A stretch of DNA of 64,000 bases, from IMG/VR virus record IMGVR_UViG_3300050821_002957, positions 248,001-312,000 of that record; one strand, given 5' to 3'. Below are positions 3,581 through 63,872 of the stretch, in pieces. The position numbers and the translations under genes were made by a program. Each line of letters begins with the position of its first letter. Position 1 is the first letter of the stretch. The notes under the pieces are model-generated. The model made no database searches, was not told where the DNA came from, and was given only the letters and a program-made list of their open reading frames with translations.

Positions 3581-5364
3581 ATGTGGCTGGACAACTATTT
3601 ACAATTCTCGCAAAGCTCGGATTCGTTTGATTTGATCGGCTGCATACTCTTCTCGATTTTCATCCAAATAGATTGCAGCGAGCTTTCGTAATGCTTCCAT
3701 CAATACTTGCTTGGCTTCGCTAATTTCGTCTCGGCAATCACGTACCTTTTTGGAGTACTTGTCGTGAGCCGTCATTGGTGTGCTTGGTCTCATAATCCTC
3801 GTCTCCAATCCTTCACCCATTCTAACGCAATCCACTCATGCATTCTTCGATCCAGGTCGCCGTTTCCCACCATCGTGTTTCTGTACCAATGGTCTTCGGA
3901 AAAAATAAGAACTTGGTTACCTCTCGACGATCATTTGCCCTAGGCCAGGAACGTGTCGATGCTGTCCAACGCATTCCTATTCTTCTTTCTTTGCCGGGGT
4001 CAGTAACTTCATCGATGTGTTGGAACAGAGGATAGCCTTTTGTCCTTGGATCGGCTCATCAAGTAATACGATGTACGTCTTGATGATGTGATCGAGTGCT
4101 AGACCAAGTACGGTTCCGGTGCCCCTGATCTGATTCGTGATGTTGAACTGAATGTGATCATCAACATTGAACGTAACTCGAAACGCCGGGTTATCCAATG
4201 AATCTGATTTCACAGTTGGAACGACGAGCTTTTGGCCTTCTGGTGACTCGATAAAATCTTCGGCGGTGATGTTAATTATTTCCTGATTCTTCATTGTTTC
4301 CTGCTATGTACTGAATACCGTAATTCTGTCCTCGCTTTCCGAAGATCCAACGACCGGCGACCACACCCTTATAGATGTTCGCATTCATTATCATGTTGGT
4401 CATGTCTGTCATCATCATAACAGATTTCATACCTGTGGTCATCGACTCCAATTCCAAATAGGCAGCGGAACGACCTCGACCATATCCAAGAATCTTCATG
4501 GTATCATCAAACTCTGCTGGGACACGCCACTGATAGTCGTAATGTCTGATCTGCCAACCAATCCAATTGAGCCAATCCGCTTCGTCTTTCCACGTTGGTT
4601 TCCCGTCGTAACGCATCGGATTCTGAAAGCCTGCATCACGAACCGCTTTCCATTCTGCCAGTTTGGTGATACAAACTGATTGCCTATCTGCCCAATGAGG
4701 AACATCGCCCGTCTGATTGTGAAACGGAATTTGTATGGTGCTCTTCCTCTTTTTTGTCGGCATAGAACTTTCTCCAAGAATACCACAAAAATTTTGGTTG
4801 TCAAAAGAATCGGATGTGGTAGGATACGTAAAGAGGCTTCCCTTACAATATGAATTTGAGTTATGAAAATTTGATGGCAAGCTGTATCATGGCAGCAGTA
4901 GATATAGCTTTACAAGAAGCAAAGACAACCCCATTGACACCGGGCGCTCATGTCGGTCATGTGGATCTGGAGAAGTACGGCCCAAGGTGGGGAATACTTC
5001 AGACCATCACACCAACCGAAGCAACTGTCGAGATGAAAGACGGTGAAATCATGACTTGGGAAACTGAGGGAATGGTCGATATCGAACGTGTCGATTCACT
5101 CATCAAAGAAAACCAAGAAAAAGTGATGAAGGAAATCATGTTGCTTAATTCCCTGGACGAAAACAACAATGGTGTAGCATTAGAATCCAATCCAATGATG
5201 ATCGGTGGCGCTGACTTGCCGACTCCTGGTTGTGACTGTGATCACTGTGCTACGTTCACACCAGAACAACACGAACAAGCTCGGTTGGTGGCAGAACAGA
5301 TGGGGCTGGACATTGATCCGAAATCTTCGACCTATCTTCAATTGAAAGCCGCTGCTGATCTCAA

Positions 5365-43711: not shown

Positions 43712-44647
43712 TTACACCACCAAATCTTTGGGCAAGCGTTCAGTCCGTGCAATCTCTTCTGCGGTCGGTTTGATCACATTGCCGACGATTCCACCGAAGA
43801 TTGCTCCGACCGTATCTGTGTCGCCACCGACCTCAATGAAGCTGTTGATGCAGGATGCGAACGAAAGACCTTTTTCCAAAGCCTGATGTGCCTGCCATAA
43901 TGCAAAAGGAACTGTATCGACTGCCGTTACTTCTTTGCCGTTTCCAACCTTGCCAATTATTCCCCAATTGGTTTCGTTAAATGCACCCTCACTGGCGACC
44001 CATTCGATGCGATCACGAAGTTCCCCTGATGGTGTGTATTTGATGATGTTTAACCAGAAGTCTTCCTCAGGTCTTCCATAAGTTACGTTTGCTGCGGCTA
44101 TGGCGACCGCTATCGAACCGGCAATAGCATCGACGTGATAATGGGTCACTTCGGCAGATAGACGTGCTTCTTGCGCTACAAGGCCATAGTCAGGTCCAAA
44201 GTGTGCGCCAATGACAGCATCACGCATTGCCGATCCGTTGCCTTTTGAGCCGATGCCCGGTCCCCACCAATTCTTGCTATGCTCAAGCCAATTGTCGGAG
44301 TCATAGCTATAGGTCGTCAACAAACCACGAGTGCCACGCCCATAACCACGCTGAGGATCAACATGAAAATTACGAGCTAATTCCTGAGCGAGTTCGAGTT
44401 GATTGATCGTATTGAATCGGTACAAAGTTCTAACGACACCAATACCGACATGTGTGTCGTCTGTCCAGGGATAGAGAATGTCAATTTTTGTGATCCCTCG
44501 TTCAGTGGCGACATTCCCAGCCTTGTAATATTCAGCCGGAAGAATCTTCATCTGATTTTCGCCTGCTGCATCGCCTACCGACAAGGCAAGAAGCGAAAGA
44601 TAAGTTTCTTTCTTTTTGTACTGCATCGGAGCAAGACAGGGTGTCAT
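43712..44647 (-). CDS. ADP-ribosylglycohydrolase family protein
   Basis: VGDAAG, WTDDT, RGYG, GNGSAMR, VTH, GGDTDT. Confidence 0.92.
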   Translation of the reverse strand: MTPCLAPMQYKKKETYLSLLALSVGDAAGENQMKILPAEYYKAGNVATERGITKIDILYPWTDDTHVGIGVVRTLYRFNTINQLELAQELARNFHVDPQRGYGRGTRGLLTTYSYDSDNWLEHSKNWWGPGIGSKGNGSAMRDAVIGAHFGPDYGLVAQEARLSAEVTHYHVDAIAGSIAVAIAAANVTYGRPEEDFWLNIIKYTPSGELRDRIEWVASEGAFNETNWGIIGKVGNGKEVTAVDTVPFALWQAHQALEKGLSFASCINSFIEVGGDTDTVGAIFGGIVGNVIKPTAEEIARTERLPKDLVV

Positions 44648-45605: not shown

Positions 45606-45684
45606 TGTCGTGAACAAATGGTTCCTCGGATGGGAGCGGTATCATAGGCAGTGATAATCCCACCTGATTCCCCGGCTCACGACA
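45606..45684 (-). ncRNA. Y-RNA-like RNA 1 (bulged-C terminal helix)
   Basis: UGUCGUGAGC-C-GGG...GGGAUUAUC...AUUUGUUCACGACA. Confidence 0.7.
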
Positions 45685-45990: not shown

Positions 45991-46521
45991 GTGTCGGTGT
46001 TAAGGCACACCGAGCAGGCCGCAAGATTTTGTTACTGATCAATACCTGCTAAGAACCAGGATGTTTAAGAACTTATCCTTGAGAAAGCTCCGTTGTAGGC
46101 GACACGGCTTCCCTGAGAGTCAGAGTTACTTCAGCTACTCCTGATGGTATGGTGACTCAGCTACCCCGACTTTTTAGTGATCGGCTCCATTCCGGTATTC
46201 GATTCGGCAACGACAGATTCCGACTCTGCAACGTTCTGCTTCTTTTCGATGAGAAGCAAAAATCATAAAAACTCAAAATGACCAGAGGACCCTCAGCAGT
46301 GAGCGCAGATCCCACGTTCGCATACAAGCGTCAATGACAAGTTTTATCCAACGAGCCATTGTCTTGTACGTTGGCTCACCGTCGAGTGCGCTATCCAGTT
46401 CGACACACTCACCTGCGGTTCTAATGACTTTCGTCTCCCGCTGGCCCTATCATCGCCTCACACTTCCGTGTGTTTCAACATCCTGGTCATCTCAAGGGCG
46501 ACAGCCTTGCGGCCACGACAC
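45991..46521 (-). ncRNA. Large pseudoknotted ncRNA, ROOL-like (~530 nt)
   Basis: Long-range pairs 45991-96:46516-21, 46017-25:46506-14, 46055-65:46477-87 and 46077-84:46490-97 (last two cross); lies in a tRNA cluster; family name is an inference. Confidence 0.65.
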
Positions 46522-46768
46522 CCCACCAGCTTTTTTACTGTGTACTGATCACAGGGAGAGCTAGAACGACTTTCGCCGCCCCACACCTACCGCCACTGGT
46601 CGAGACTTCTACATGCGACCAGCCATGTCGCTAAAAGGGGCACTACGAGTAGATGCCCTCCACCACGTTGTTCTTTTACGTCCAACAACGAAACGACTTA
46701 GACCCATAACTCTGACCGGAAATCAGAACTATGATCCACACTCCCCGGTGGAAGCCGGGAAGACTTTG

Positions 46769-46855
46769 AATGTGAACTAATAATTGACAAGGGATTATAG
46801 CCCCGAAGGACCATTTCACCATTTGAAAGATAACCCTCATCTTCCGGCTCACATC
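46769..46855 (-). ncRNA. Y-RNA-like RNA 2
   Basis: GAUGUGAGC-C-GGAAGAUGAGGGUUAUCUUUC...AUUAGUUCACAUU. Confidence 0.68.
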
Positions 46856-46864
46856 ACGAAATAC

Positions 46865-46963
46865 GGCTGCTTGTCCTACCATTAGACGACCGGATCTGCC
46901 GACGCTTTACGCCATGAGAGCAGATTGGACTCCGACCGGGACTCGAACCCGGATTTCTCAGCT
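46865..46963 (-). ncRNA. Circularly permuted tRNA-like module (YrlA-type T-acceptor-D order) 1
   Basis: CCGGG-UUCGAGU-CCCGG, then UCGGAGUCCA, linker hairpin, UCCGG-UC-GUCUAAUGGUAGGAC; closed by GCUG/CAGC. Confidence 0.8.
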
Positions 46964-46971
46964 AGACGAAT

Positions 46972-46996
46972 GACGGAGCATAGTGCGCTCTACGTC
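46972..46996 (-). repeat. Conserved bulged hairpin, copy 1 of 3 (others 58131..58157, 58628..58654)
   Basis: (GA)ACG-UM-GAGCG-CASUR-UGCUC-CGU. Confidence 0.8.
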
Positions 46997-47001
46997 GGAA
47001 T

Positions 47002-47078
47002 TGGTGGATACACATGGGAATTGAACCCATAACCTTCTCGGTGCAAGCGAGTTGCTCTCCCAATTGAGCTAGTGACCC
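47002..47078 (-). tRNA. tRNA-Ala(TGC) with a 1-nt bulge in the acceptor stem
   Basis: GGGTCAC / GTG-T-ATCC, G3.U70, loop CTTGCAC, ACCA. Confidence 0.9.
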
Positions 47079-47085
47079 ATAACTT

Positions 47086-47162
47086 TGTACCTCGAACAAA
47101 TAAGTATCAGAGGGCTTGTCATTAGGAAAGATAACCCTCTAAATCCGGCTCGAAGCACTACA
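47086..47162 (-). ncRNA. Y-RNA-like RNA 3
   Basis: GCUUCGAGC-C-GGAUUUAGAGGGUUAUCUUUC...AUUUGUUCGAGGU. Confidence 0.72.
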
Positions 47163-47169
47163 AAACTTT

Positions 47170-47248
47170 TGGTGGATCGCCAGGGATTTGAACCCTGCTG
47201 TTATCCTCGGTGCAAGCGAGGCAAACACCCCAAGCATTTCCGCAACCC
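47170..47248 (-). tRNA. tRNA-Ala(TGC), non-canonical 6-bp D stem
   Basis: GGGTTGC/GCGATCC with G3.U70; AAATGC-TTGGG-GTGTTT D arm; CCTCG-CTTGCAC-CGAGG. Confidence 0.85.
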
Positions 47249-47256
47249 ACATTTAA

Positions 47257-47466
47257 ATAGCACGAACAAATAGCGGTAGAAGACTGATAGGAGACTGCAT
47301 TTAACGCACCCTCGGATTGGATACCGATCAGATACGCTTCAAACTCCCCTCCTCAAAGTTACGGGCGTCTTTTACTACACGTACAACGAACTGCTTTGTG
47401 CCCACCAAATACTGCCGGTGAACTTTGTCATGGTTAGGTAACCTTCCAACCAGCGGCTCGTGCTAT
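47257..47466 (-). ncRNA. Y-RNA-like RNA 4 (long internal domain)
   Basis: AUAGCACGAGC-C-GC...GAAGGUUACC...AUUUGUUCGUGCUAU. Confidence 0.7.
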
Positions 47467-47468
47467 GT

Positions 47469-47530
47469 CGAAACAGAACGAAACAGAACGAAACAGAACG
47501 AAACAGTGCTCAACGATGCGAAACAGTGCG
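47469..47530. repeat. 10-bp tandem repeat CGAAACAGAA x3 plus two CGAAACAGTG variants
   Basis: Read directly from sequence. Confidence 0.9.
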
Positions 47531-48220
47531 TTAGGTCAAAGATCGTATTCTTTATCTATACACGCTACAGTTTGCTTTCAATAGCGCCTTTGACTCTTTC
47601 AGTCTAACATCCTTAGTATGGGATGTCAAGTGCCACGAACATAATAATTTCATCTTCGTCTTTTTTGCGACGAGCAGCAGCTTCTTTCTCAGTCAACACC
47701 AGAGGAGACGGATTGCCTTCGACTTTGATATTCACTGATAAACCTTGCTGGAGCCATCCAGATACTTCATCGGGCGGCGTCTCGACAAATGCCTGATCAC
47801 ACGCCTTCTGAATTTCGACATTGCGTATTGCAGCAAGCGGTTTGCCGGATGGCGTCATGATGTCTACGTTACAAAGAAGCATGTTTATCTACCAACTGCT
47901 ACGGCTGAAATTCCGATAACACTTTCAATATTGTACAACAGACGAGCGGCTTCTGACAATTCTGAGCCGGTGCGATCCAGTGTAGCATGGACGCCGGTCG
48001 GATCAGAATCAGCTTTTGAGTCATCGTCTTCTCCGGTGTATTGAAGAACATCTAACACCGTTTTTAAGCGACGAGCCAACATCCTAGCCAATTGCAAATT
48101 TGCATCCGAAGAAGATTGAATTGTCGTTGGTTCGTGGTTCTTTTCTGCTGGACCGTCAACAACTAATCCAAACTTCTCTAATAAAACTTTGTTTCCTTTC
48201 TTTCCTGTATTCATAATTTT

Positions 48221-48381: not shown

Positions 48382-50175
48382 CTACTCTTCGGTCTCTTCT
48401 GCGATCCCAGCACTTGAACCACGAATAAAATCCGTAACCAATGCTGGAACATTCGAGTCGAACCCAACGATGTCCAAAGAATACGGGTCCTTCGGATCTG
48501 CGATGGTAAATTGCGTAGAAACCATTCCCATCACGATCAGGCGCACATCATCCTGCCCACGATGCTTACGATACTGCTTGAGAGCCTGCGACGGTTGCAT
48601 TTGTCCAGCCCAAGTCTCATTATCCGTGATCACCATGAAAGCGTCTGCGTCGATGCCAGCCTTTTGAGCGTGAAGCATCGGTGCAGCACAATCGGTTCCA
48701 CCAGCCGACATGCGAGAGGTCTTTGCCAACGCAGTCTTCAGAGTGTCCTTTGCGGTGATGCCAATTTCCTGCATTCCCGTAGAAAATGCATAGATAGCGT
48801 AATTCGGTTCCGTGCGAGCCACAACCATCGCCATTGCTGCGCCTGCTTGTGCTGCCGTGATTCCGGTGCCTTGGATGATGCTGGACGCCCACGACATAGA
48901 ACCAGAAACGTCCATGCCAATGTACGTAGCCTTACCAGTCGGAATTGCGTTTGCGAATGCCAAGTAGAACGTGTTCTCTAAAGCGTCCACAATGGTCGGT
49001 ACAACGGTCCAGGTCGCATCGCTGCGCTGACCGTGGCCTTGGCCGTAGGTGCCTTGTGCCAACAATACCTGGAGCGGGTGAATCTTGCTCTTCTTGACGT
49101 AGGCTTCATCGTTCAAACGAGACACGACGAGCTTCGATGCTGCCGACAGCGGCTTCAAGAGACCAATCTTCGACATGGTTCCAAGATTACGAACCATTGC
49201 AGTTACCGGCATCTTCTGAAGCAGAGCTTCCCAGACTTCCGGTTGCGTCTTAAACTGCGTCGGAATCATTTCGTGAGTCAATCCACCGTCGATGATGCAC
49301 TTTACGATAGTGCTCGTATCCGTCGCCTTCTTTGCGGTTTCATAGGCGGTGATCAACTTCGGTGCGTTCGATCCGGTCAACAAATCATAAGCGTTCTGAT
49401 AGCGAGCACGCTGATTCTGAATTTCCGCAGAAGTCAGATCAGTCGTGCGATGGCTGTTGCCCTGCCACTTCTTGACAGAACGAGTCCAGTTCTGAGCAGC
49501 TTCGTTCAAGGCATCGAGACCACCGAAACGACCCCAAGCCAGCAAAGCACTCTTCATCGGATCAGTCGCCTTGACGTGTGCGAGGCTGACGAGATCACGA
49601 GTGGACCAGCCATCACGCTGTTGATACTTCGCCAACTGATAAGCCAGCGAATCTTCCGTGCGTTCGGTGTACCAGTTGCCGATTGCAGTCTTTACACCAC
49701 GACCGTATCCACGCATGGAATCGAGGTACTCGTTGAAGTGGAACATGTGAGTACCGATACGTGCAACCTTGCTCAATTGCGACAGAGCATAAGCAGCAGT
49801 TTCAGCCGAACCAAAATTCGGTGTTGCGGCAACTGCCAGGGCAAACAATGCCGGATCGTTCTTCGGAGCACGGCCTGCTTGCGAAATGTTGACGATCATA
49901 TCGACCGTGCGCTTTCCATCCAACTGCAAGCACGCACGAACGTTCGCTGCGTTGTCTACAGTCATCTTCTTGGCAGATGCATAGTACGTCGGCGCATCGC
50001 TACCGAGAATCAAAAATCGTTCGAGCATCTGGAAGGGAGTGATGGTGAAGGTGTATCCACCAGCGTTGTTCTGCTTCATCTCTGCTTCCCGGCCCGGAAT
50101 TGCCTGCGACTGTGATGTCTTCTTGCCGCTTAATACCGTTGCGTAATTGCTCTTTGCTGATCCTGCCTTTGCCAT
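48382..50175 (-). CDS. rsr: Ro60/Rsr TROVE-domain RNA-binding protein
   Basis: NNAGGY, RFLILGS, GRAPKNDPALFALA, KYQQRDGWS, RNLG.M, IHP, vWA DVSGSM, TDNETW, GFD; AGGAGA SD before ATG 50175. Confidence 0.95.
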   Translation of the reverse strand: MAKAGSAKSNYATVLSGKKTSQSQAIPGREAEMKQNNAGGYTFTITPFQMLERFLILGSDAPTYYASAKKMTVDNAANVRACLQLDGKRTVDMIVNISQAGRAPKNDPALFALAVAATPNFGSAETAAYALSQLSKVARIGTHMFHFNEYLDSMRGYGRGVKTAIGNWYTERTEDSLAYQLAKYQQRDGWSTRDLVSLAHVKATDPMKSALLAWGRFGGLDALNEAAQNWTRSVKKWQGNSHRTTDLTSAEIQNQRARYQNAYDLLTGSNAPKLITAYETAKKATDTSTIVKCIIDGGLTHEMIPTQFKTQPEVWEALLQKMPVTAMVRNLGTMSKIGLLKPLSAASKLVVSRLNDEAYVKKSKIHPLQVLLAQGTYGQGHGQRSDATWTVVPTIVDALENTFYLAFANAIPTGKATYIGMDVSGSMSWASSIIQGTGITAAQAGAAMAMVVARTEPNYAIYAFSTGMQEIGITAKDTLKTALAKTSRMSAGGTDCAAPMLHAQKAGIDADAFMVITDNETWAGQMQPSQALKQYRKHRGQDDVRLIVMGMVSTQFTIADPKDPYSLDIVGFDSNVPALVTDFIRGSSAGIAEETEE

Positions 50176-50250
50176 ATCATTATCTCCTATGATACCTAAT
50201 TTTTTCGACTTCACCAGAATAACACATGCCTGATTGTTGTCAAGCATGTA

Positions 50251-52209: not shown

Positions 52210-52809
52210 CTACTCTTCTCTCGGACGAGGCTTGACGATCTTGTCGATGATGCCGTATGCCAGTGCTTCTTCGGCATCCATGATGTAGTCACGCTCAAGA
52301 TCCTTCTCGATGCGCTCAATCGGCTGACTTGTCAAATCAACCATCATGTTGACCAGACGCTTCTTGGTCTTTAAAATATGTTCGGCGTAGATCGCAATGT
52401 CTGTAGCCTGTCCACCAAGACCGTACATCGACGGCTGGTGAATCATGACCTCAGCACCAGGAAGAGCAAACCGCTTGCCCTTGGTGCCACACATCAAGAT
52501 TGATGCACCCATCGAAGCTGCACGACCGACACAGGTAGTCTTGATATCGACACCGACGAGGTTCATGGTATCAATGATTGCCATGCCTGCGGAGATCGAT
52601 CCACCCGGCGAATTGATGTAAATCTGAATGTCTTTCTCAGGATTTTCGGTCGAGAGATAAAGTAACTGTGCGACGACAGCGTTCGCAACATAGTCATCAA
52701 TCGGTGTTCCCAAGAAAATGATATTGTCTTTCAACAGACGTGAGTAAATATCATACGCACGTTCACCCTTGTGATCCGATTCGATTACGATTGGAGTAAG
52801 CATTGACAT
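52210..52809 (-). CDS. clpP: ATP-dependent Clp protease proteolytic subunit
   Basis: [23 protein letters not shown] (Ser), MIHQP (His), ERD (Asp). Confidence 0.97.
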
Positions 52810-53451: not shown

Positions 53452-53988
53452 TCATTGCGGCTCGAAGAGAATGACGTGTATGTTATCAAGCTCCTGTAGT
53501 CTATCATAAACCAATGCCTTTACGTCAACAAAATTCAGACCACCATTCGCACAACCTAACGCAGGCATCGCAAGAGACTTGATGAGTAAACCTGACTTCA
53601 GCCGGTCCTTCAAATCATCGAGGCCAGCGGCGATCCATTCTAGTTTTGATCCATTTCTCCAATCGTCTTTCGTCGGAAAATTGATAATGAATTCGTTGAT
53701 CTGAGATGTTTGATAGTGTTCACATCCGCAGGCACACCACAACCCCTGATCATGGGCGTCAAAATCACATTCACAAAGACAGTCAGGGATTTCATGCCAA
53801 ACCCAAACCTTACCAGTCTGAATGTACTTGCGAGCGCACAATTTCCTGTATTCGACGTACATGTCAGGATAACGCTGCTTGAACTGGAGTGCGATACCTT
53901 TGCCCATCACGCCGACACAATTCACAGTGTTGACGATAGCTTGTGCGCCGCAGTCGAAGAGGTTACCAGTCGTTCGTGTTTCGATCAT
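53452..53988 (-). CDS. Macrodomain protein (DarG-like) with Cys-rich insertion
   Basis: GNLF, AIVNTVNCVGVMGKGIALQFK, IINFPTK, PALGC.NGGL. Confidence 0.9.
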   Translation of the reverse strand: MIETRTTGNLFDCGAQAIVNTVNCVGVMGKGIALQFKQRYPDMYVEYRKLCARKYIQTGKVWVWHEIPDCLCECDFDAHDQGLWCACGCEHYQTSQINEFIINFPTKDDWRNGSKLEWIAAGLDDLKDRLKSGLLIKSLAMPALGCANGGLNFVDVKALVYDRLQELDNIHVILFEPQ

Positions 53989-56761: not shown

Positions 56762-57385
56762 TTACTTATTCAATTCTGCTTCATTGACATCACAGGCTAA
56801 GTTGCTGGTCATATAGTTTCCACTGAGAGCCGATGACGTATAGGTGCTACGGACAGCGCTCATTGCATTCATCGCCATTCCAGTGTTGGCTACGGTATAG
56901 TTGACGGCATTCGATACGCCAATATCCTTCGCCGCCGCCCATGCATCTTGATTGGCACCGAAGTAGACGAAGCCCCATTTGTTTTCATCCTGACGAATTT
57001 TGATCAACGTCTGGATTGCTGCACGCTTCCATTCTCTAGAAGCATTTTCACGTCCGTCTGTCATGATTGTAACCATGACATCAGTCTCACCCCTGGTAGC
57101 CGTAGAAATAGTTGCACCAATGGCATCGAACAATGCTGTCCCGCCGTCTGGGGAATATGTGTTTTTGTTAAGTTTTTGAACTTGTGCGAGTGGAACATCG
57201 GTGAATACCTTTTCCACTTTTTCTGAGAACTTGGTGAGAGATACAAGGTAGGTAACTTCACCTGCCTTCTCTTCTTTCGCCATCATTTGTAACTGTTCAT
57301 TGAATCCATCGATTACGACTTGTTGCTGATTGAGCATCGAGCCGGATTCGTCAAGGATAAACTTCTGCTTAATTGTCTTAGCCAT
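56762..57385 (-). CDS. vWA domain protein
   Basis: FILDESGSM MIDAS, GGTALFDAIG, TDGRENAS, W.F.Y.GAN. Confidence 0.9.
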   Translation of the reverse strand: MAKTIKQKFILDESGSMLNQQQVVIDGFNEQLQMMAKEEKAGEVTYLVSLTKFSEKVEKVFTDVPLAQVQKLNKNTYSPDGGTALFDAIGATISTATRGETDVMVTIMTDGRENASREWKRAAIQTLIKIRQDENKWGFVYFGANQDAWAAAKDIGVSNAVNYTVANTGMAMNAMSAVRSTYTSSALSGNYMTSNLACDVNEAELNK

Positions 57386-58164
57386 TCTGTAGTGGCCTCC
57401 TGTATTGAATTGCAAAGTGACGTACTGCATTACCCGCACTTCTGTTTTATATAGACAGGAGATTTTAGACAAAAAGGTGGGATGAAAAAGAAAAAGCGCA
57501 GGGTCCGGGAATGACCATTGCGCCTCTTCTCGACGTTTTCTCCTTGTGCTACCACAGACGCACCGATTAAAGTGCCGGGGCGACGATCCCCAAAGGAGTT
57601 TGGCTTGCGCCTTAAACACGTCCAGAGATTCCCGCTCCAAACGCTTCCACTTCGGTGTAGGTCCGCAGTGGTCAGTTACGCCCTCTCGTCAAGCGAGTGC
57701 GCTCTATTTTTATCGATGTCCGAGACAGGAATTTAACCTGCATACTCCGAAGTTGGATGCTATTCTACGGTGCGGACATGCCCACGATCCGTTTCAGCTA
57801 CTTTCGGACAAACTTTATACACGGTGGTGCATCTTATACTTCTTGGATCGAAACCCAAGCGGGGACGGAGTATGCCGCATCGAGAGCATTGAACGGTTGC
57901 AGGACGTTACTCCCTTGGCCTGTATTCTCGACTTCCTTCTGGTCCGTAAGCCCGACTACCAGAAACTCACCAAAACCTACTTGTCGGCGGGAGGGATTTT
58001 TCACTTGCTAAATCCAGTCCGCTTATCCGGTGGGACCTATCCTTTTCAGGGCCGACGAGAAATCCGGGGCGCTTTCGTTAAGCTATCGTTCATGACCGAC
58101 CTGGAGTGCCAGGATCTTCCCCGTATCGAAGAACGGAGCACACTGCGCTCGACGTTCAAACTAA

Positions 58165-58358
58165 TTGGAAGAGAGGACTTCACTTATAGTTGTTCCAACA
58201 CTCCGACGTTGCAACATCGAAGCCAAGCTGACTTTCCAGCTTCCGTAGTTGACTATCTAGAATTCGTCTAACTCTGCGGAGTCGAACCGCTCTCGCCCCT
58301 CAACGGGGCTGTGCTTCCGTTACACTAAGTGAGCAACTACGTGTCTTCTCTCTTCCAA
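58165..58358 (-). ncRNA. ~195-nt RNA with long terminal stem enclosing a tRNA-like domain
   Basis: UUGGAAGAGAG/CUCUCUUCCAA; inner GUGU-AACGGAA-GCAC D arm, GCCCC-GUUGA-GGGGC, GCGG-UUCGACU-CCGC T arm. Confidence 0.65.
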
Positions 58359-58661
58359 AAATCCACGGTCACTGCTTGCCTATGGAACCCTCATCACATT
58401 CGACATCTCTGCGATTTGAGGTAGCACTTTCCAGGTGCCCTTTATACCCTTACCGACATGCAGCGACCACTAAAAATTCCGGCTGGACTGCGCTGAACGA
58501 GGCCGGTTCGCTATTTCCTGTTCAACTAGATGATGGTAGCTTACCACCATCACGTCGGCTCTTACGCCGCAAGATTGTGCGCTATTACACTTCACATGGT
58601 GTTTAGTCACAATCCAGCCTAATCGACGAACGGAGCATACTGCGCTCTACGTTCAAAATCC

Positions 58662-58730
58662 GTAGTGTCCTGCCATTAGACGACCGGAACGTTACGTTCC
58701 GAGAGGGACTCGAACCCCCATTTCCACTAT
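58662..58730 (-). ncRNA. Circularly permuted tRNA-like module 2 (closed acceptor stem)
   Basis: GGGGG-UUCGAGU-CCCUC; UCGGAACG-UAA-CGUUCCGG; UC-GUCUAAUGGCAGGAC. Confidence 0.8.
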
Positions 58731-58731
58731 C

Positions 58732-58784
58732 GGTGCCGTCCTGCCATTAGACGATTTTCAGAGGAGTCGAACCCCATTTGCACC
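58732..58784 (-). ncRNA. Minimal permuted T-arm/D-arm module 3 (no acceptor stem)
   Basis: GGUGC..GGGG-UUCGACU-CCUC-UGAAAA-UCGUCUAAUGGCAGGAC-GGCACC. Confidence 0.7.
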
Positions 58785-59799
58785 TTCTCCGCATCTTGGA
58801 GGAAGCTACGTGAGTGCTTCACCTATGGGTTTACCAGTGCTCTTTCGAGTTGGTTTCCATGTCTGCCGTCGCACGTCGGTATCAGCCTTTCGGTCCTAAC
58901 ACTCCAAGAAAACTTAAATGTGATGGCCCTTCTACGCCAGTCCTTTTCACGTCTTCTCTAGATCGCAGGCTCTCTCGTCTCAAGGACCATCACAAAACAA
59001 ATTGGTAGCAGGTAACCCTTCGTGCCTTGAAGGATTTTACAGAGTGCTCGTCCAACCTTGCTACCAAAAAATCTACATTTGGCGAAAAACTGGACCATGC
59101 CATTTCCAGGCTTGGCGGCGACTCATCTTGTCTCGACTTCGGGATCGCCCTTCACCCTATCCCATGTTCTTCCGGTTTCTATCCCGGCCTGTTAAGCACC
59201 AAACAAAACTGCGACTTCCAGTCTTTGTAATCCTTTATGGTCGCTGTCCGCTCTGGCTGCTCTGCGCTGCCCTCTCAACAAACCCAGGATAACAAACCTA
59301 CGCTTCCATGTCAATAGCTACATCATCTTTTTTTGAATTATTTTCGACGATCCAGGGAACCTCGATTTTGACCTGTTTTTCTCGTTCCAACCAAAACCAC
59401 GCCATCTTGGTAAGACCGTAGACATGGTTCGTAGGATCGCCACCATTGAGCCTACAGAGCGCTATAGCGAATCGATTTGCATGGACCCAGGCCCAACCCC
59501 ATTTTTCGGCACCGGCAAGGTGGAGGGCATTGAGATCCTCAACAGGCCGATCCAAAATAACCAACATATTTTCGCATTGATCAGGTGGGAGAGAATGGAT
59601 GCGCTCGCCACAAATAAATTTTGCATGTTCTGAAACTTCAACCGTGGGATCGTTCAAGAATTTAACAGCGGCTTCATTGTCTTCAGCGACAAACCCCCAA
59701 ATACCGAAGCCATCGCAAACGGGACAAGTATCAGTTCCTCGAATGCGTCCCGAGCCTTTACATAAATCGCAGGGTCCATAGGTCATGAACCCATTTAGA

Positions 59800-62445: not shown

Positions 62446-62748
62446 TTATTCCTCGTCGTTAATATCTAGCCAATCGGGAGCTTCCCAGGTTCGGTGAATA
62501 ACTCTGACGTAGATTACACCTTCTTCTTCGTCAAGATTCCATTCAAGATCATCGCCAACTTCTATGTTCAATTCACGAACTAATCCATCTGGCAGTGTCA
62601 TCATTCCGTTCGGTTGTATGACACAGGCATATGACCTATTACCAAATCCAGAGTTCACCCAGACACCTAAAATGGGTGGTTCATCATTATCTTCAGTCGG
62701 CTCTTCGTCAAAGTCTTCCGGTTCTAGCTCTGCGTAATCTTCAGCCAT
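62446..62748 (-). CDS. AbrB/MazE-like DNA-binding protein
   Basis: IQPNG.MTLP..LVRELNIEVGDDLEW. Confidence 0.7.
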   Translation of the reverse strand: MAEDYAELEPEDFDEEPTEDNDEPPILGVWVNSGFGNRSYACVIQPNGMMTLPDGLVRELNIEVGDDLEWNLDEEEGVIYVRVIHRTWEAPDWLDINDEE

Positions 62749-63872
62749 TTTCTTCCTACCCGAATCACTGACATTTCTGGCAACGGTTCTTTGAGTCTTG
62801 GATCGATAACTACACTACCATTTACATTTACGGCTCCGCTCTTCACCAGACGACTGCCCTCTGAGACCGAAGATGCCAAACCCATCAGCACCAAGACTCG
62901 ATCCAGGCGTGTATTGACCGAATGAAAAACCGGAATTCTTACAACTGGAATATCGACCGGCGCTTCACGATCTGAAAATCTCTTTGTCCATTCAATTTCA
63001 GCGGTGTCTGCTTTTGGTTCGTCATGTAACCAATGAACAATTCGCCATGCCAAATATTTCTTAGATTGAAATGGTTGAGGATGCCAGCCACATTTATTTG
63101 GAAACAGAACCTCTTGCCATTGGCGCATTACATCATCAGCAATCGACATAACTTTGCTGAACATTTCAAATGGTTCATCCAGCAAACCAATGTGATTACC
63201 GAACGACTTGGACATCTTTCGACCGTCCGTACCAAACAACAAAGGAACCGTCGCAATAACCTGAGGTTTCTCACCACGATCATGCATGTACATCCGGCCC
63301 ATCAGCATGTTGTAAAATTGATCGTTGCCGCCAAGTTCAATATCTACACCTTCTCTGAAAGAGTCATATGCCTGAAGCATGGGGTATAACATCTCATGCA
63401 TAAAGACCGGAGTGTTTGTTACCTTGCGTTCTTTAAAATCGTCACGGCCACCGATTTGACTGAGGGTGAAATGGGACATGAGACGAATTACATCTTGCAT
63501 CTTCATCTCGTCAAACCATTCGGCATTCTTTTTGACGACGGTTTTGGTTCGATCCAAAATTTTGAAAGCCTGTGTCATATAGCTCCAGGCGTTCGTATTG
63601 ATTTCATCGTCAGAAAGCGCAGGCCGAAGCTGATTGCGCCCGGTCGGATCACCAATCGATGCTGTGGTGTTGCCGACGATCATCACAATGGTGTGCCCAG
63701 CATCCTGAAATTCACGCATCTTTTTCAACAGCACAGCATGACCAAGATGTAGGTCTGGTGCTGTGGGATCGAATCCGGCTTTCACACGTAACGGATGACC
63801 TGACGCAATAAGAGCATCAAACTCCTTTTCGTCGAGGAGTTGCGTAAACCCGGATTTGAGTGATTGTTGCAC
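62724..63872 (-). CDS. tyrS: Tyrosyl-tRNA synthetase
   Basis: GFDPTAPDLHLGH, GDPTGR, YP.LQAYD, GG.DQ, KMSKS, C-terminal S4 domain. Confidence 0.97.
   Translation of the reverse strand: MQQSLKSGFTQLLDEKEFDALIASGHPLRVKAGFDPTAPDLHLGHAVLLKKMREFQDAGHTIVMIVGNTTASIGDPTGRNQLRPALSDDEINTNAWSYMTQAFKILDRTKTVVKKNAEWFDEMKMQDVIRLMSHFTLSQIGGRDDFKERKVTNTPVFMHEMLYPMLQAYDSFREGVDIELGGNDQFYNMLMGRMYMHDRGEKPQVIATVPLLFGTDGRKMSKSFGNHIGLLDEPFEMFSKVMSIADDVMRQWQEVLFPNKCGWHPQPFQSKKYLAWRIVHWLHDEPKADTAEIEWTKRFSDREAPVDIPVVRIPVFHSVNTRLDRVLVLMGLASSVSEGSRLVKSGAVNVNGSVVIDPRLKEPLPEMSVIRVGRKWLKITQS

What the first reader, a model, noticed from the sequence alone, without database searches (positions are those of the whole stretch)
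46865..46963. Permuted tRNA module keeps an internal CCA and is uncoupled from the Ro-binding stem
The order is T arm, acceptor 3' strand UCGGAGU-CCA, linker hairpin, acceptor 5' strand, Glu/Asp-type D arm. In described YrlA the tRNA domain is nested in the Ro stem; here it sits in tandem just 5' of Y2. The retained CCA looks like the 3' half of one tRNA joined to the 5' half of the next, a plausible snapshot of YrlA origin. It could alternatively be processed into a two-piece RNA with a free CCA end.
Basis: partly seen in the sequence, partly recalled or inferred. Interest (0 to 1): 0.75.

Follow-up and report, generated by a model that had tools for sequence, protein, structure and literature searches.

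The report
Un-nested tRNA-like module beside phage Y RNA
A 405-kb soil phage that carries a Ro60 gene and several Y RNAs has a real, rearranged tRNA-like module sitting just in front of one Y RNA instead of inside it; this is a derived, lineage-specific variant of the known YrlA design, not a picture of how YrlA began.

Summary
The anatomy is real, on the minus strand. It reads T arm, acceptor 3' strand plus CCA, 30-nt hairpin, acceptor 5' strand, D arm, closed by a 4-bp helix. A covariance model built only from permuted modules of other phages hits it at 48 bits (E about 7e-11). A second model shows Y2 (46855..46769) closes on itself 15 nt downstream. The module is therefore truly outside the Ro60-binding stem.

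Corrections:
- The acceptor-like stem is 5 bp. The CCA lies in a 6-nt bulge.
- The D half is tRNA-Gln type, not Glu/Asp.

Context argues against "snapshot of YrlA origin":
- About 30 modules in other Ro60 phages are nested.
- The same genome has nested YrlA-like RNAs 165 kb away.
- In a 64%-Ro60 relative the apparent Y2 counterpart holds a nested module.
- The two closest relatives (76-77%) have hairpin b and Y2 but no module.

The tandem state therefore looks derived and lineage-specific. A sibling copy lies at 58725..58665.

Internal NCCA is common in nested phage modules (8 of 34). Cutting into two pieces is already known from M. smegmatis YrlA.

No transcript evidence was obtained for the module. 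Function is inferred: a tRNA mimic tethered to, or processed away from, Y2. Verdict: a new variant of a known kind, of moderate interest.

The parts
48382..50247 (-). Ro60/Rsr ortholog, 621 aa, upstream of the ncRNA cluster
   Evidence: Pfam TROVE 2.9e-40 and vWA_Ro60 2.2e-57. D. radiodurans Rsr 2NVO, E 4.7e-105.
47259..47464 (-). Y0, a large Y RNA (206 nt) closed by a 9/9 lower stem
   Evidence: Stem script. Discrete 215-220-nt contigs at 47254-47477 in soil metatranscriptomes X3 and X5; an X4 contig also covers it but runs past 47500.
47170..47248 (-). Degenerate tRNA-Ala(UGC)-like element
   Evidence: ARAGORN only; no Rfam tRNA hit. Conserved in relatives.
47089..47156 (-). Y1, a simple Y RNA
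   Evidence: R2 50.9 bits. Rfam sbRNA RF01656, 34.6 bits, E 1.6e-4, below its gathering score.
47002..47078 (-). tRNA-Ala(UGC) with encoded CCA
   Evidence: Rfam tRNA 51.1 bits; ARAGORN.
46972..46996 (-). Hairpin b (GACG-UA-GAGC-loop-GCUC-CGUC), a repeated structured element
   Evidence: Five copies in the genome with a covarying outer stem. Present after tRNA-Ala in L205 and L207.
46959..46962 (-). 5' strand (GCUG) of the 4-bp helix that closes the module
   Evidence: MFE of the 99-nt stretch.
46936..46952 (-). T arm with consensus T loop UUCGAGU
   Evidence: Sequence; R1 alignment.
46926..46935 (-). Acceptor 3' strand UCGGAGU followed by CCA
   Evidence: Sequence. Only UCGGA is paired in R1 and in the MFE; GUCCAA is a bulge.
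46895..46924 (-). Extension hairpin stacked on the acceptor-like stem
   Evidence: MFE and centroid. Treated as a 36-nt insert by R1.
46890..46896 (-). Acceptor 5' strand GAUCCGG
   Evidence: R1 alignment. Part of the 22/22 match to tRNA-Gln 5' parts.
46873..46887 (-). D arm GUCU/AAUGGUA/GGAC, tRNA-Gln type
46866..46869 (-). 3' strand (CAGC) of the closing helix
46856..46865 (-). Single-stranded linker to Y2
   Evidence: It lies between the closing helix and the R2 hit. UUUCGU before Y2 is conserved in L205.
46769..46855 (-). Y2, a self-closed Y RNA with no tRNA-like insert
   Evidence: R2 37.7 bits, no broken pair. Orthologs in L205, L207 and L210.
58665..58725 (-). Sibling permuted module: 7-bp acceptor UCGGAAC/GUUCCGG, 5-nt loop, same D arm
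   Evidence: R1 59.0 bits; script.
58736..58782 (-). Third T-arm plus D-arm unit, without an acceptor stem
   Evidence: R1 29.0 bits.

Best explanation
The stretch is a YrlA-type tRNA-like domain. A T arm and a tRNA-Gln-type D arm could dock as in a tRNA elbow. They are joined through a long acceptor-like hairpin and closed by a short helix.

It lies in a cluster of Y RNAs and tRNA-like elements just downstream of the phage Ro60 gene. A promoter-like site near 47629..47601 may drive the cluster.

Unlike every other module examined, it is not enclosed by a Ro60-binding stem. It is a 5' neighbour of the self-contained Y RNA Y2.

Most likely history: a lineage-specific rearrangement or duplication. 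The module was either moved out of a nested YrlA (the state seen in relative L210), or copied from the sibling at 58.7 kb.

Most likely function: a tRNA mimic that offers a handle for tRNA-binding proteins. It would act either while tethered to Ro60-bound Y2 through the short linker, or after being cut free.

Shown: the anatomy, the homology to nested phage modules, the un-nested position, and the state in relatives.

Inferred: transcription, folding of the elbow, Ro60 binding to Y2, and any protein partner.
For: - R1, built from other phages' modules, scores 48.0 bits here and 59.0 bits at the sibling.
- The module family is structurally real. In A1, 97.3% of cells are paired, 13 of 16 pairs change on both sides, and 0 of 500 shuffles reach the observed score.
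- Y2 is an independent Y RNA: R2 37.7 bits. R2's own alignment has 10 of 13 covarying pairs.
- The Ro60 gene ends 1.4 kb upstream.
- Nesting in other phages and in this genome.
- L210 has a nested Gln/Glu-type module inside a Y RNA whose 5' strand shares CCGGAAGAUGA and the motif after it with window Y2. L205 and L207 lack the module.
- The T loop and D loop keep the residues needed for the elbow: GG in the D loop, UUC-A in the T loop.
- Long acceptor stems are already reported for some YrlA RNAs (PMC4201824).
- Y0's contig ends lie 6-15 nt from the 5' end of the next tRNA-like element. This fits tRNA-punctuated processing of the cluster.
Against: - No RNA contig covers 46789-47253 in three metatranscriptomes that do hold Y0 and the RNA downstream of Y2. 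No RNA run was listed for 46770-47003. The tool warns that a hole proves nothing. Even so, a stable species over 200 nt (module plus Y2) would probably have assembled as Y0 did.
- The module is absent from the two closest relatives and from L209 and L212, so it is dispensable.
- Folding energy is no better than shuffles. A rod-like MFE (-69.7) beats the tRNA-like fold (-67.5 kcal/mol).
- The acceptor-like stem has only 5 pairs.
- R1 also gives 40-48 bits to junctions of tandem tRNAs, so the score alone is not decisive.
Confidence: 0.55

Rival explanations
1. Normal-topology tRNA-sized unit. The acceptor 3' strand pairs with AUUCCGA (47001..46995), which directly abuts the CCA of tRNA-Ala. This gives a 76-nt RNA (47001..46926) with a 7-bp acceptor stem, a T arm and a terminal CCA. 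It would serve as an RNase P/3'-processing punctuation mark or a minihelix. The acceptor 5' strand and D arm would then be only a 5' leader of Y2.
For: - 7 of 7 pairs, one of them G-U, at a position flush with the preceding CCA. The unit length is exactly 76 nt.
- Constrained energy is -66.0 against -67.5 kcal/mol for the permuted fold. Pair probabilities are similar, about 0.1-0.15.
- The upstream strand is transcribed first.
Against: - In L205 and L207 the same flank (UUCAGCG) belongs to hairpin b, and no T arm follows. AUUCCGA is therefore not an old acceptor strand.
- Its G and A are needed for the outer stem of hairpin b, which covaries across five copies.
- There is no D-loop GG inside this unit and no anticodon stem.
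- ARAGORN gives no hit, and Rfam tRNA gives none even at E 10.
- The sibling at 58725..58665 can only fold the permuted way.
- A random 7-mer match somewhere in the roughly 50 nt upstream is expected about 1 time in 10 (my estimate).
Confidence: 0.15
2. Evolutionary debris. The module is a recent, selectively neutral by-product of recombination among tRNA-Gln-like pieces, hairpin b copies and Y RNAs. It has no function of its own and is on the way to being lost.
For: - It is absent at the orthologous site in L205, L207, L209 and L212.
- The sibling modules at 58.7 kb are also missing from the 10 kb upstream of Ro60 in L213 and L214.
- The distal acceptor pairs are degenerate.
- There is no RNA evidence.
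- The surrounding region holds other tRNA-like fragments.
Against: - The T loop, D loop and D stem are intact consensus. The closing helix is present.
- Three copies persist in the genome.
- It lies inside an ncRNA cluster whose neighbours are found in RNA libraries.
- None of these points is decisive.
Confidence: 0.2
3. Two-piece RNA, a sub-case of the best explanation. RNase P cuts 5' of GAUCCGG and the spacer hairpin is trimmed back to the CCA. One piece is then hairpin b, T arm and acceptor 3' strand with CCA. The other is acceptor 5' strand, D arm and Y2. Acceptor and elbow contacts hold them together.
For: - M. smegmatis YrlA is cut by RNase P in vivo and in vitro, gains CCA, and both halves stay on Rsr (PMC4201824).
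- NCCA follows the acceptor strand in 8 of 34 nested phage modules, against about 0.5 expected.
- Other phages encode the same design with free acceptor ends and CCA: L007, L012, L014, L032.
- The lack of a contig over 200 nt fits small pieces.
Against: - Only 5 acceptor pairs form here and there is no discriminator base.
- The nucleotides 5' of the would-be cut are paired in the hairpin.
- Chen et al. tie RNase P cleavage to a 7-bp acceptor stem.
- L210 has UCAA at this place, so the CCA may not be a kept tRNA end.
Confidence: 0.2

Closest known systems
YrlA RNAs of S. Typhimurium, M. smegmatis and mycobacteriophages (Chen et al. 2014, PMC4201824; structure preprint 10.1101/312249)
   Same: - Permuted order: T arm, acceptor-like stem, D arm.
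- Encoded next to Ro60.
- Some members have long acceptor stems.
- One member is cut by RNase P and carries CCA.
   Different: - The module here is not enclosed by the Ro60-binding stem. It lies 15 nt 5' of a complete Y RNA.
- The D arm is Gln-type rather than the usual GCUC...GAGC type.
- The acceptor-like stem has 5 bp plus a bulge.
Nested YrlA-like RNAs of Ro60-encoding phages in metagenomes, including this genome's own at G000 129.2-130.0 kb and relative L210
   Same: - Recognised by the same covariance model R1.
- Some have Gln/Glu-type D arms.
- Some have NCCA after the acceptor strand.
   Different: All of them have a Y 5' strand about 30-40 nt upstream of the T arm and the matching 3' strand after the D arm.
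Simple Y RNAs: metazoan Y and sbRNAs, Thermus phage phiLo Yrl1/Yrl2 (PMC12135203)
   Same: Y1, Y2 and Y3 are stem, bulge and loop RNAs with a conserved 5' strand. Y1 comes close to matching the Rfam nematode sbRNA family.
   Different: These carry no tRNA-like domain. They describe the neighbour (Y2), not the module.
D. radiodurans Yrn1
   Same: A Y RNA with T-arm and D-like features.
   Different: It has the opposite order of arms and is nested. An RNA with that orientation is seen in relative L207 8731-8901, not at this site.
Junctions of tandem tRNA genes, the false-positive class named by Chen et al. 2014
   Same: T arm, CCA, spacer, then the acceptor 5' strand and D arm of a tRNA-Gln-like sequence. 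R1 scores real junctions 40-48 bits.
   Different: No tRNA body lies on either side. The sibling copy has a 5-nt loop where a junction would need a CCA and a spacer.
Permuted tRNA genes of Cyanidioschyzon merolae and two-piece (permuted) tmRNA genes (from my own knowledge)
   Same: The 3' tRNA half is encoded before the 5' half. The acceptor ends are joined by a spacer that is removed.
   Different: - There is no anticodon arm and no tag reading frame here.
- ARAGORN places this phage's permuted tmRNA elsewhere, at G000 183192-183533.

Membership tests
YrlA-type Y RNA | tRNA-like domain with T arm, acceptor-like stem and D arm in permuted order | tested here: met
   R1 48.0 bits, E about 7e-11. 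Consensus T and D loops.
YrlA-type Y RNA | The tRNA-like domain is nested inside the stem formed by the RNA's 5' and 3' ends, which binds Ro60 | tested here: not met
   - R2 gives no hit around the module.
- Y2 closes on itself 15 nt downstream.
- The flanks do not pair beyond 4 bp.
YrlA-type Y RNA | Encoded within about 4 kb of a Ro60 ortholog | tested here: met
   Ro60 ends at 48382 and the module starts at 46962, on the same strand.
YrlA-type Y RNA | Bound by Ro60/Rsr; T and D loops modified by TruB and DusA | not testable with these tools
   Needs immunoprecipitation and modification mapping.
Canonical tRNA | Cloverleaf in the normal order, with an anticodon arm | tested here: not met
   No ARAGORN call. 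No Rfam tRNA hit at E up to 10 over 46865-47003.
Tandem-tRNA junction | The T arm belongs to a complete upstream tRNA and the D arm to a complete downstream tRNA | tested here: not met
   - No tRNA bodies.
- Upstream lies hairpin b and downstream lies Y2.
Simple phage/metazoan-type Y RNA (applies to Y2, the neighbour) | Terminal stem with conserved 5' strand (GAGCCG...GGGUUAUC) and a bulged C, with the loop distal | tested here: met
   R2 37.7 bits with no broken pair. The family's stem covaries.
Two-piece YrlA (M. smegmatis type) | 7-bp acceptor stem cut by RNase P, with a CCA 3' end on the 5' piece | tested here: inconclusive
   - A CCA is encoded, but only 5 pairs form.
- Positions 2:71 and 1:72 are A-G and G-U.
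- Cleavage was not tested.
Permuted tmRNA | Acceptor piece plus coding piece with a tag reading frame | tested here: not met
   ARAGORN finds the tmRNA elsewhere in the genome and none here.

The most novel reading that the evidence does not exclude
The three un-nested modules are the one studied here and the two at 58.7 kb. On this reading they form a class of their own. They would be free-standing, permuted, tRNA-Gln-derived RNAs that expanded recently in this jumbo phage and work without being built into a Y RNA. They could act as decoys or handles for host tRNA-binding enzymes or tRNA-targeting defences, or as processing marks that release the neighbouring Y RNAs. The two rival acceptor pairings of the window copy could then be a real switch between a tRNA-sized RNA and a Y2-linked form.
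Probability: 0.15. Interest if true: 0.65.

Novelty: new variant of a known kind. Interest (0 to 1): 0.42.

Why it matters
Y RNAs are thought to work as two-module tethers: a Ro60-binding stem and an effector domain, held in one fold. This locus and its relatives show that phages connect the same two modules in several ways:
- nested, the known YrlA design;
- with free acceptor ends and the Y stem in the anticodon position;
- in the Yrn1-like order;
- here, side by side.

If the tandem form is active, rigid coupling of the two modules is not required. That would constrain models of what the tRNA-like domain does.

If it is inactive, it dates a recent break-up of a YrlA and shows the domain can be lost. 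The closest relatives have lost it or never had it.

The finding does not bear on how YrlA first arose.

Tried and rejected
1. Rfam has no hit for the module or for Y2. Only Y1 comes near a family (nematode sbRNA), below its threshold.
2. blastn against the phage collection found only tRNA-Ala matches. The 756-nt downstream region found nothing.
3. Exact-pattern scans for the module's acceptor and D arm returned only the source contig itself, so no near relatives were found that way.
4. A scan for a Gln-type D arm followed by a Y 5' strand returned only ordinary tRNA-Gln genes, so no second tandem case was found.
5. Folding energy does not separate the permuted fold, the upstream-acceptor fold and a rod.
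6. Y2 as an anticodon-arm replacement of a normal-topology tRNA-like RNA, using the hairpin at 46759..46744 as a T arm and GUGGAUC as the acceptor strand: rejected. The loop has 6 nt and no T-loop motif, there is a 4-nt gap, and an abundant downstream RNA starts there.
7. The module's 5' flank as a decayed Y 5' strand pairing with its 3' flank: there is some sequence likeness to a nested YrlA of the same genome, but no pairing, and the flank is hairpin b, which is conserved in relatives.
8. Metatranscriptome contigs gave nothing over the module. The single read-laying run used contigs, not reads.
9. A search for the 58.7-kb sibling array in relatives found none in the 10 kb upstream of their Ro60 genes.

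Full report
**Where the window lies.** It is bases 248001-312000 of a 405,631-bp virus record, complete by CheckV's estimate. The genome has 44 tRNA genes and a permuted tmRNA by ARAGORN. Everything discussed is on the minus strand. A 621-aa Ro60/Rsr ortholog lies at 50247..48382: TROVE 2.9e-40, Ro60 vWA 2.2e-57, and D. radiodurans Rsr 2NVO at E 4.7e-105.

**The ncRNA cluster downstream of Ro60.** After tRNA-Ile and two small ORFs, the order is:
- Y0, 47464..47259, 206 nt;
- a degenerate tRNA-Ala-like element, 47248..47170;
- Y1, 47156..47089;
- tRNA-Ala, 47078..47002 including CCA;
- a conserved hairpin that I call hairpin b, 46996..46972;
- the reported module;
- Y2, 46855..46769;
- about 750 nt of non-coding sequence;
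- an ORF, a terminator-like hairpin, and Y3, 45683..45607.

- a T arm;
- a 5-bp acceptor-like stem that continues, after a 6-nt bulge GUCCAA, into a 6-bp and a 5-bp helix;
- a D arm;
- a 4-bp closing helix.

This fold is not more stable than shuffled sequence (z -0.74). In the 239-nt context a rod-like fold is slightly better: -69.7 against -67.5 kcal/mol. Energy therefore proves nothing. The evidence has to come from comparison with other sequences.

**Related phage loci.** I fetched 80 viral contigs encoding Ro60 relatives, 36-46% identical. Many hold RNAs with the conserved 5' strand (GAGCCG, a few bases, then GGGUUAUC) and a matching 3' strand. Many of those enclose a T arm, a 7-bp acceptor hairpin and a D arm.

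**Two covariance models.**
- R1 models the permuted module. It was built from 21 modules, none from this genome. In its alignment 97.3% of cells are paired, 13 of 16 pairs change on both sides, and 0 of 500 shuffles reach the observed score.
- R2 models simple Y RNAs, built from 25 sequences. Ten of its 13 pairs show compensatory change.

**Results in the window.**
- R1 gives 48.0 bits at 46958..46871, 59.0 bits at 58725..58665, and 29.0 bits at 58782..58736.
- R2 gives Y1 50.9 bits, Y2 37.7 bits and Y3 23.7 bits, and nothing around the module.

So the module is a homolog of the tRNA-like domain of phage YrlA-like RNAs, and Y2 is a complete Y RNA that begins 15 nt after it.

**A caveat on R1.** It also gives 40-48 bits to junctions between real tandem tRNAs, because the T and D arms carry most of the score. 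Chen et al. 2014 warned of this false-positive class (PMC4201824). Here no tRNA body exists on either side. The sibling at 58725..58665 has a perfect 7-bp acceptor closed by a 5-nt loop, which no junction could have. The sibling shares three things with the window module: the five basal acceptor pairs (UCGGA with UCCGG), the T loop, and the D arm apart from one base. The two are therefore paralogs, and the permuted fold is the one their lineage keeps.

**Which tRNA the module resembles.** The segment CCGGUCGUCUAAUGGUAGGACA is identical over 22 nt to the 5' part of ordinary phage tRNA-Gln(UUG) genes. It is 17 of 18 identical to this phage's own tRNA-Gln(CUG). "Glu/Asp-type" should read "Gln-type". 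The T arm is not specifically Gln-like.

**How unusual the tandem position is.** Among R1 hits in the 80 loci that do not overlap tRNA genes, most have a Y 5' strand 27-40 nt upstream of the hit. Most of the rest, when read by eye, have a variant 5' strand such as GGGCUGAAG or GGGACUGA. The exception is L035, whose flanks are different. I found no second tandem case. The same genome carries three clear nested YrlA-like RNAs, and a fourth Y RNA holding only a T arm, at G000 129.2-130.0 kb. Their R1 scores are 68.7, 45.9 and 44.7 bits.

**Orthologous loci.** A protein search found Ro60 relatives at 64-77% identity. I read their contigs. They keep the gene order Macro, ClpP, Ro60, a non-coding gap, an eIF-1A-like gene and an ADP-ribosylglycohydrolase.
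- L205 (76%) and L207 (77%) have tRNA-Ala-like, Y1, tRNA-Ala, hairpin b flush after the CCA, a small hairpin, and then the Y2 ortholog. No T/D module lies between hairpin b and Y2.
- L209 and L212 (67%) also lack it.
- L210 (64%) has a hairpin-b-like element followed by a canonical nested RNA. Its 5' strand, with CCGGAAGAUGA and the GGGUUAUC motif, closely matches window Y2. It encloses a T arm, a 6-pair acceptor with loop UCAA, and a D arm UCGUCUAACGGUUAGGAC (R1 42.7 bits). It closes with a 3' strand ending in UUGUUCAC.
- The 10 kb upstream of Ro60 in L213 and L214 holds no counterpart of the 58.7-kb siblings.

**What this says about history.** Nested is the state in the most distant of these relatives (L210) and in distant phages. 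The window's side-by-side state, and its extra copies, are specific to this lineage. I cannot say which of two routes produced it. The module may have been moved out of Y2, or it may have been copied in from the sibling locus; the acceptor bases favour kinship with the sibling. Either way it is derived. It is not a picture of how YrlA began.

**The CCA.** In 34 nested, non-tRNA modules, NCCA follows the 7-nt acceptor 3' strand in 8, where about 0.5 is expected by chance. The rest mostly have tetraloop-like closures such as GCAA or UUCG. An internal CCA is therefore a recurrent feature of the family and not a mark of this copy. It is in keeping with a tRNA origin of the domain and perhaps with processing. 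In the window the CCA lies in a bulge. L210 has UCAA at the same place and the sibling has GUAAC, so whether this particular CCA is inherited, functional or accidental stays open.

**The main structural rival.** The acceptor 3' strand also pairs 7 of 7 with AUUCCGA, which follows the tRNA-Ala CCA with no gap. That defines a unit of exactly 76 nt ending in CCA. I take this seriously, but three things weigh against it:
- The same flank in L205 and L207 is simply the 5' side of hairpin b, with no T arm after it.
- Two of its bases are needed for hairpin b's outer stem, which covaries among five genomic copies.
- The unit has no D-loop partner for its T loop and is not recognised as a tRNA.

**Expression.** Three soil metatranscriptomes were laid on the region. 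Two of them (X3, X5) hold discrete contigs matching Y0 (47254-47477, 215-220 nt); X4's contig over Y0 runs past the end of the stretch. All three hold contigs of an RNA that starts at 46788-46740 and runs down. In X4 that contig is 745 nt at depth 224.
- Y0's contigs end 6-15 nt from the next tRNA-like element. This fits processing of a polycistronic precursor at tRNA-like marks.
- Nothing covers 46789-47253, and no RNA run was listed for 46770-47003.
- Y1, Y2 and the tRNAs are all under 100 nt and would be lost in such libraries.
- A stable module-plus-Y2 species of about 235 nt might have been expected to assemble. Its absence is weak evidence for cutting or instability.
- The tool states that holes prove nothing, and that DNA can be present in RNA libraries.

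**Mechanism.** I commit, at about 0.55, to the following reading. It is a YrlA-type tRNA mimic, transcribed with the Y RNA cluster. It folds through its T and D loops and serves as a handle for tRNA-binding proteins. It acts either tethered to Ro60-bound Y2 by a short flexible linker, or after release. The published functions of the domain in nested YrlA are themselves unsettled: substrates for TruB, DusA, RNase P and CCA-adding enzyme, with no known partner (PMC4201824). Nothing firmer can be inferred here. The rivals are the 76-nt unit (0.15), neutral debris (0.2) and two-piece processing (0.2, a sub-case of the main reading).

**Novelty.** Phage Ro60 and Y RNAs are known: mycobacteriophages, CcrColossus and Bacillus phage G in Chen et al. 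2014, Thermus phage phiLo in PMC12135203, and jumbo phages in PMC7824862. The tRNA-like domain, long acceptor stems and RNase P cutting are also known. What I did not find described is a module placed beside a Y RNA rather than inside one. It is a single-lineage variant with no expression evidence, so I rate interest at about 0.4.

Noticed in passing
window 45998-46742 (minus): A non-coding stretch of about 745 nt downstream of Y2 is present as a 745-nt contig at depth 224 in one soil metatranscriptome, and as shorter contigs in two others. It holds no minus-strand ORF of 60 aa or more apart from one that overlaps its first 67 nt and Y2 (46676..46882), has no Rfam hit and no phage blastn hit, and folds better than shuffles (z -3.3). 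It may be a large structured RNA.
   Followed up: partly
window 47259-47464 (minus): Y0 is a 206-nt Y RNA with a perfect 9-pair lower stem and a large internal domain that is not tRNA-like by R1. It appears as discrete 215-220-nt contigs in two metatranscriptomes (X3, X5); a third (X4) also covers it. An ortholog lies at L207 8487-8716.
   Followed up: partly
window 57650-58830 (minus): About 1.1 kb with no convincing ORF. It holds two T/D modules in tandem, two copies of hairpin b, a Y-like 5' strand (GAGCCGA), and several odd tRNA-like fragments, for example 58340-58270 with a 5-nt anticodon-like loop. The 351 nt at 58830-58480 fold with z -2.5. Relatives L213 and L214 show no counterpart in the 10 kb upstream of their Ro60 genes.
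   Followed up: partly
window 46972-46996, 58626-58650, about 58130-58153; G000 130314 and 121013: Hairpin b has a core GAGC, a 7-nt loop and GCUC, with a 2-nt bulge, a covarying outer stem and a trailing UCGA. It occurs five times, always on the tRNA strand. In two copies (after tRNA-Ala in the window and after tRNA-Pro at G000 121 kb) it starts a few nt after a tRNA 3' end. It is conserved after tRNA-Ala in L205, L207 and, more loosely, L209 and L210. Its function is unknown; it may be a 3'-trailer or processing hairpin.
   Followed up: partly
G000 129.2-130.0 kb = L177 11007-11807 (minus): Three canonical nested YrlA-like RNAs, plus a fourth Y RNA that holds only a T arm, lie 165 kb from the only Ro60 gene. 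One has a Gln/Glu-type D arm. One has CCA directly after a 7-bp acceptor.
   Followed up: yes
L007 1661-1790 and 1883-2023; L012 4686-4841; L014 4728-4905; L032 about 4815-4950: These RNAs have normal tRNA topology. They have a 7-8-bp acceptor stem, usually followed by a discriminator and CCA (L014 has none), plus D and T arms. The anticodon arm is replaced by a Y stem whose far end is capped by a loop, which makes them the circular permutation of YrlA. Rfam's tRNA model hits two of them as 136- and 156-nt tRNAs. I did not find this described.
   Followed up: partly
L207 8731-8901: A Y RNA enclosing a D arm, an anticodon-like hairpin and a T arm in the normal order, with the Y stem in place of the acceptor stem. 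This is the Yrn1-like orientation, in the closest relative of this phage.
   Followed up: no
34 nested modules in L002-L141: NCCA follows the acceptor 3' strand in 8 of 34 nested phage modules. Most others have GNRA- or UUCG-like closures. This suggests two classes: one perhaps processed, one closed.
   Followed up: partly
window 47002-47248; L205 8506-8784; L207 8907-9197; L210 9835-10130: The trio of a tRNA-Ala-like element, Y1 and tRNA-Ala(UGC) is conserved in L205 and L207. L210 keeps the two Ala elements but no Y1 was detected between them. In the window the two Ala elements share the same anticodon stem-loop. The first is too degenerate for Rfam. The second has a bulged acceptor stem with G3-U70.
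   Followed up: no
window 47470-47499: Three exact tandem copies of a 10-nt unit (GAAACAGAAC on the plus strand) lie immediately upstream of Y0's 5' end. A promoter-like site lies at 47629..47601 on the minus strand.
   Followed up: no
window 43712-44647, 52210-52809, 53452-53988, 56762-57640, 62724-63872: The neighbourhood encodes an ADP-ribosylglycohydrolase, ClpP, a Macro-domain protein, a stand-alone vWA protein and a tyrosyl-tRNA synthetase. Macro, ClpP, Ro60 and ADP-ribosyl-GH are syntenic in relatives.
   Followed up: no
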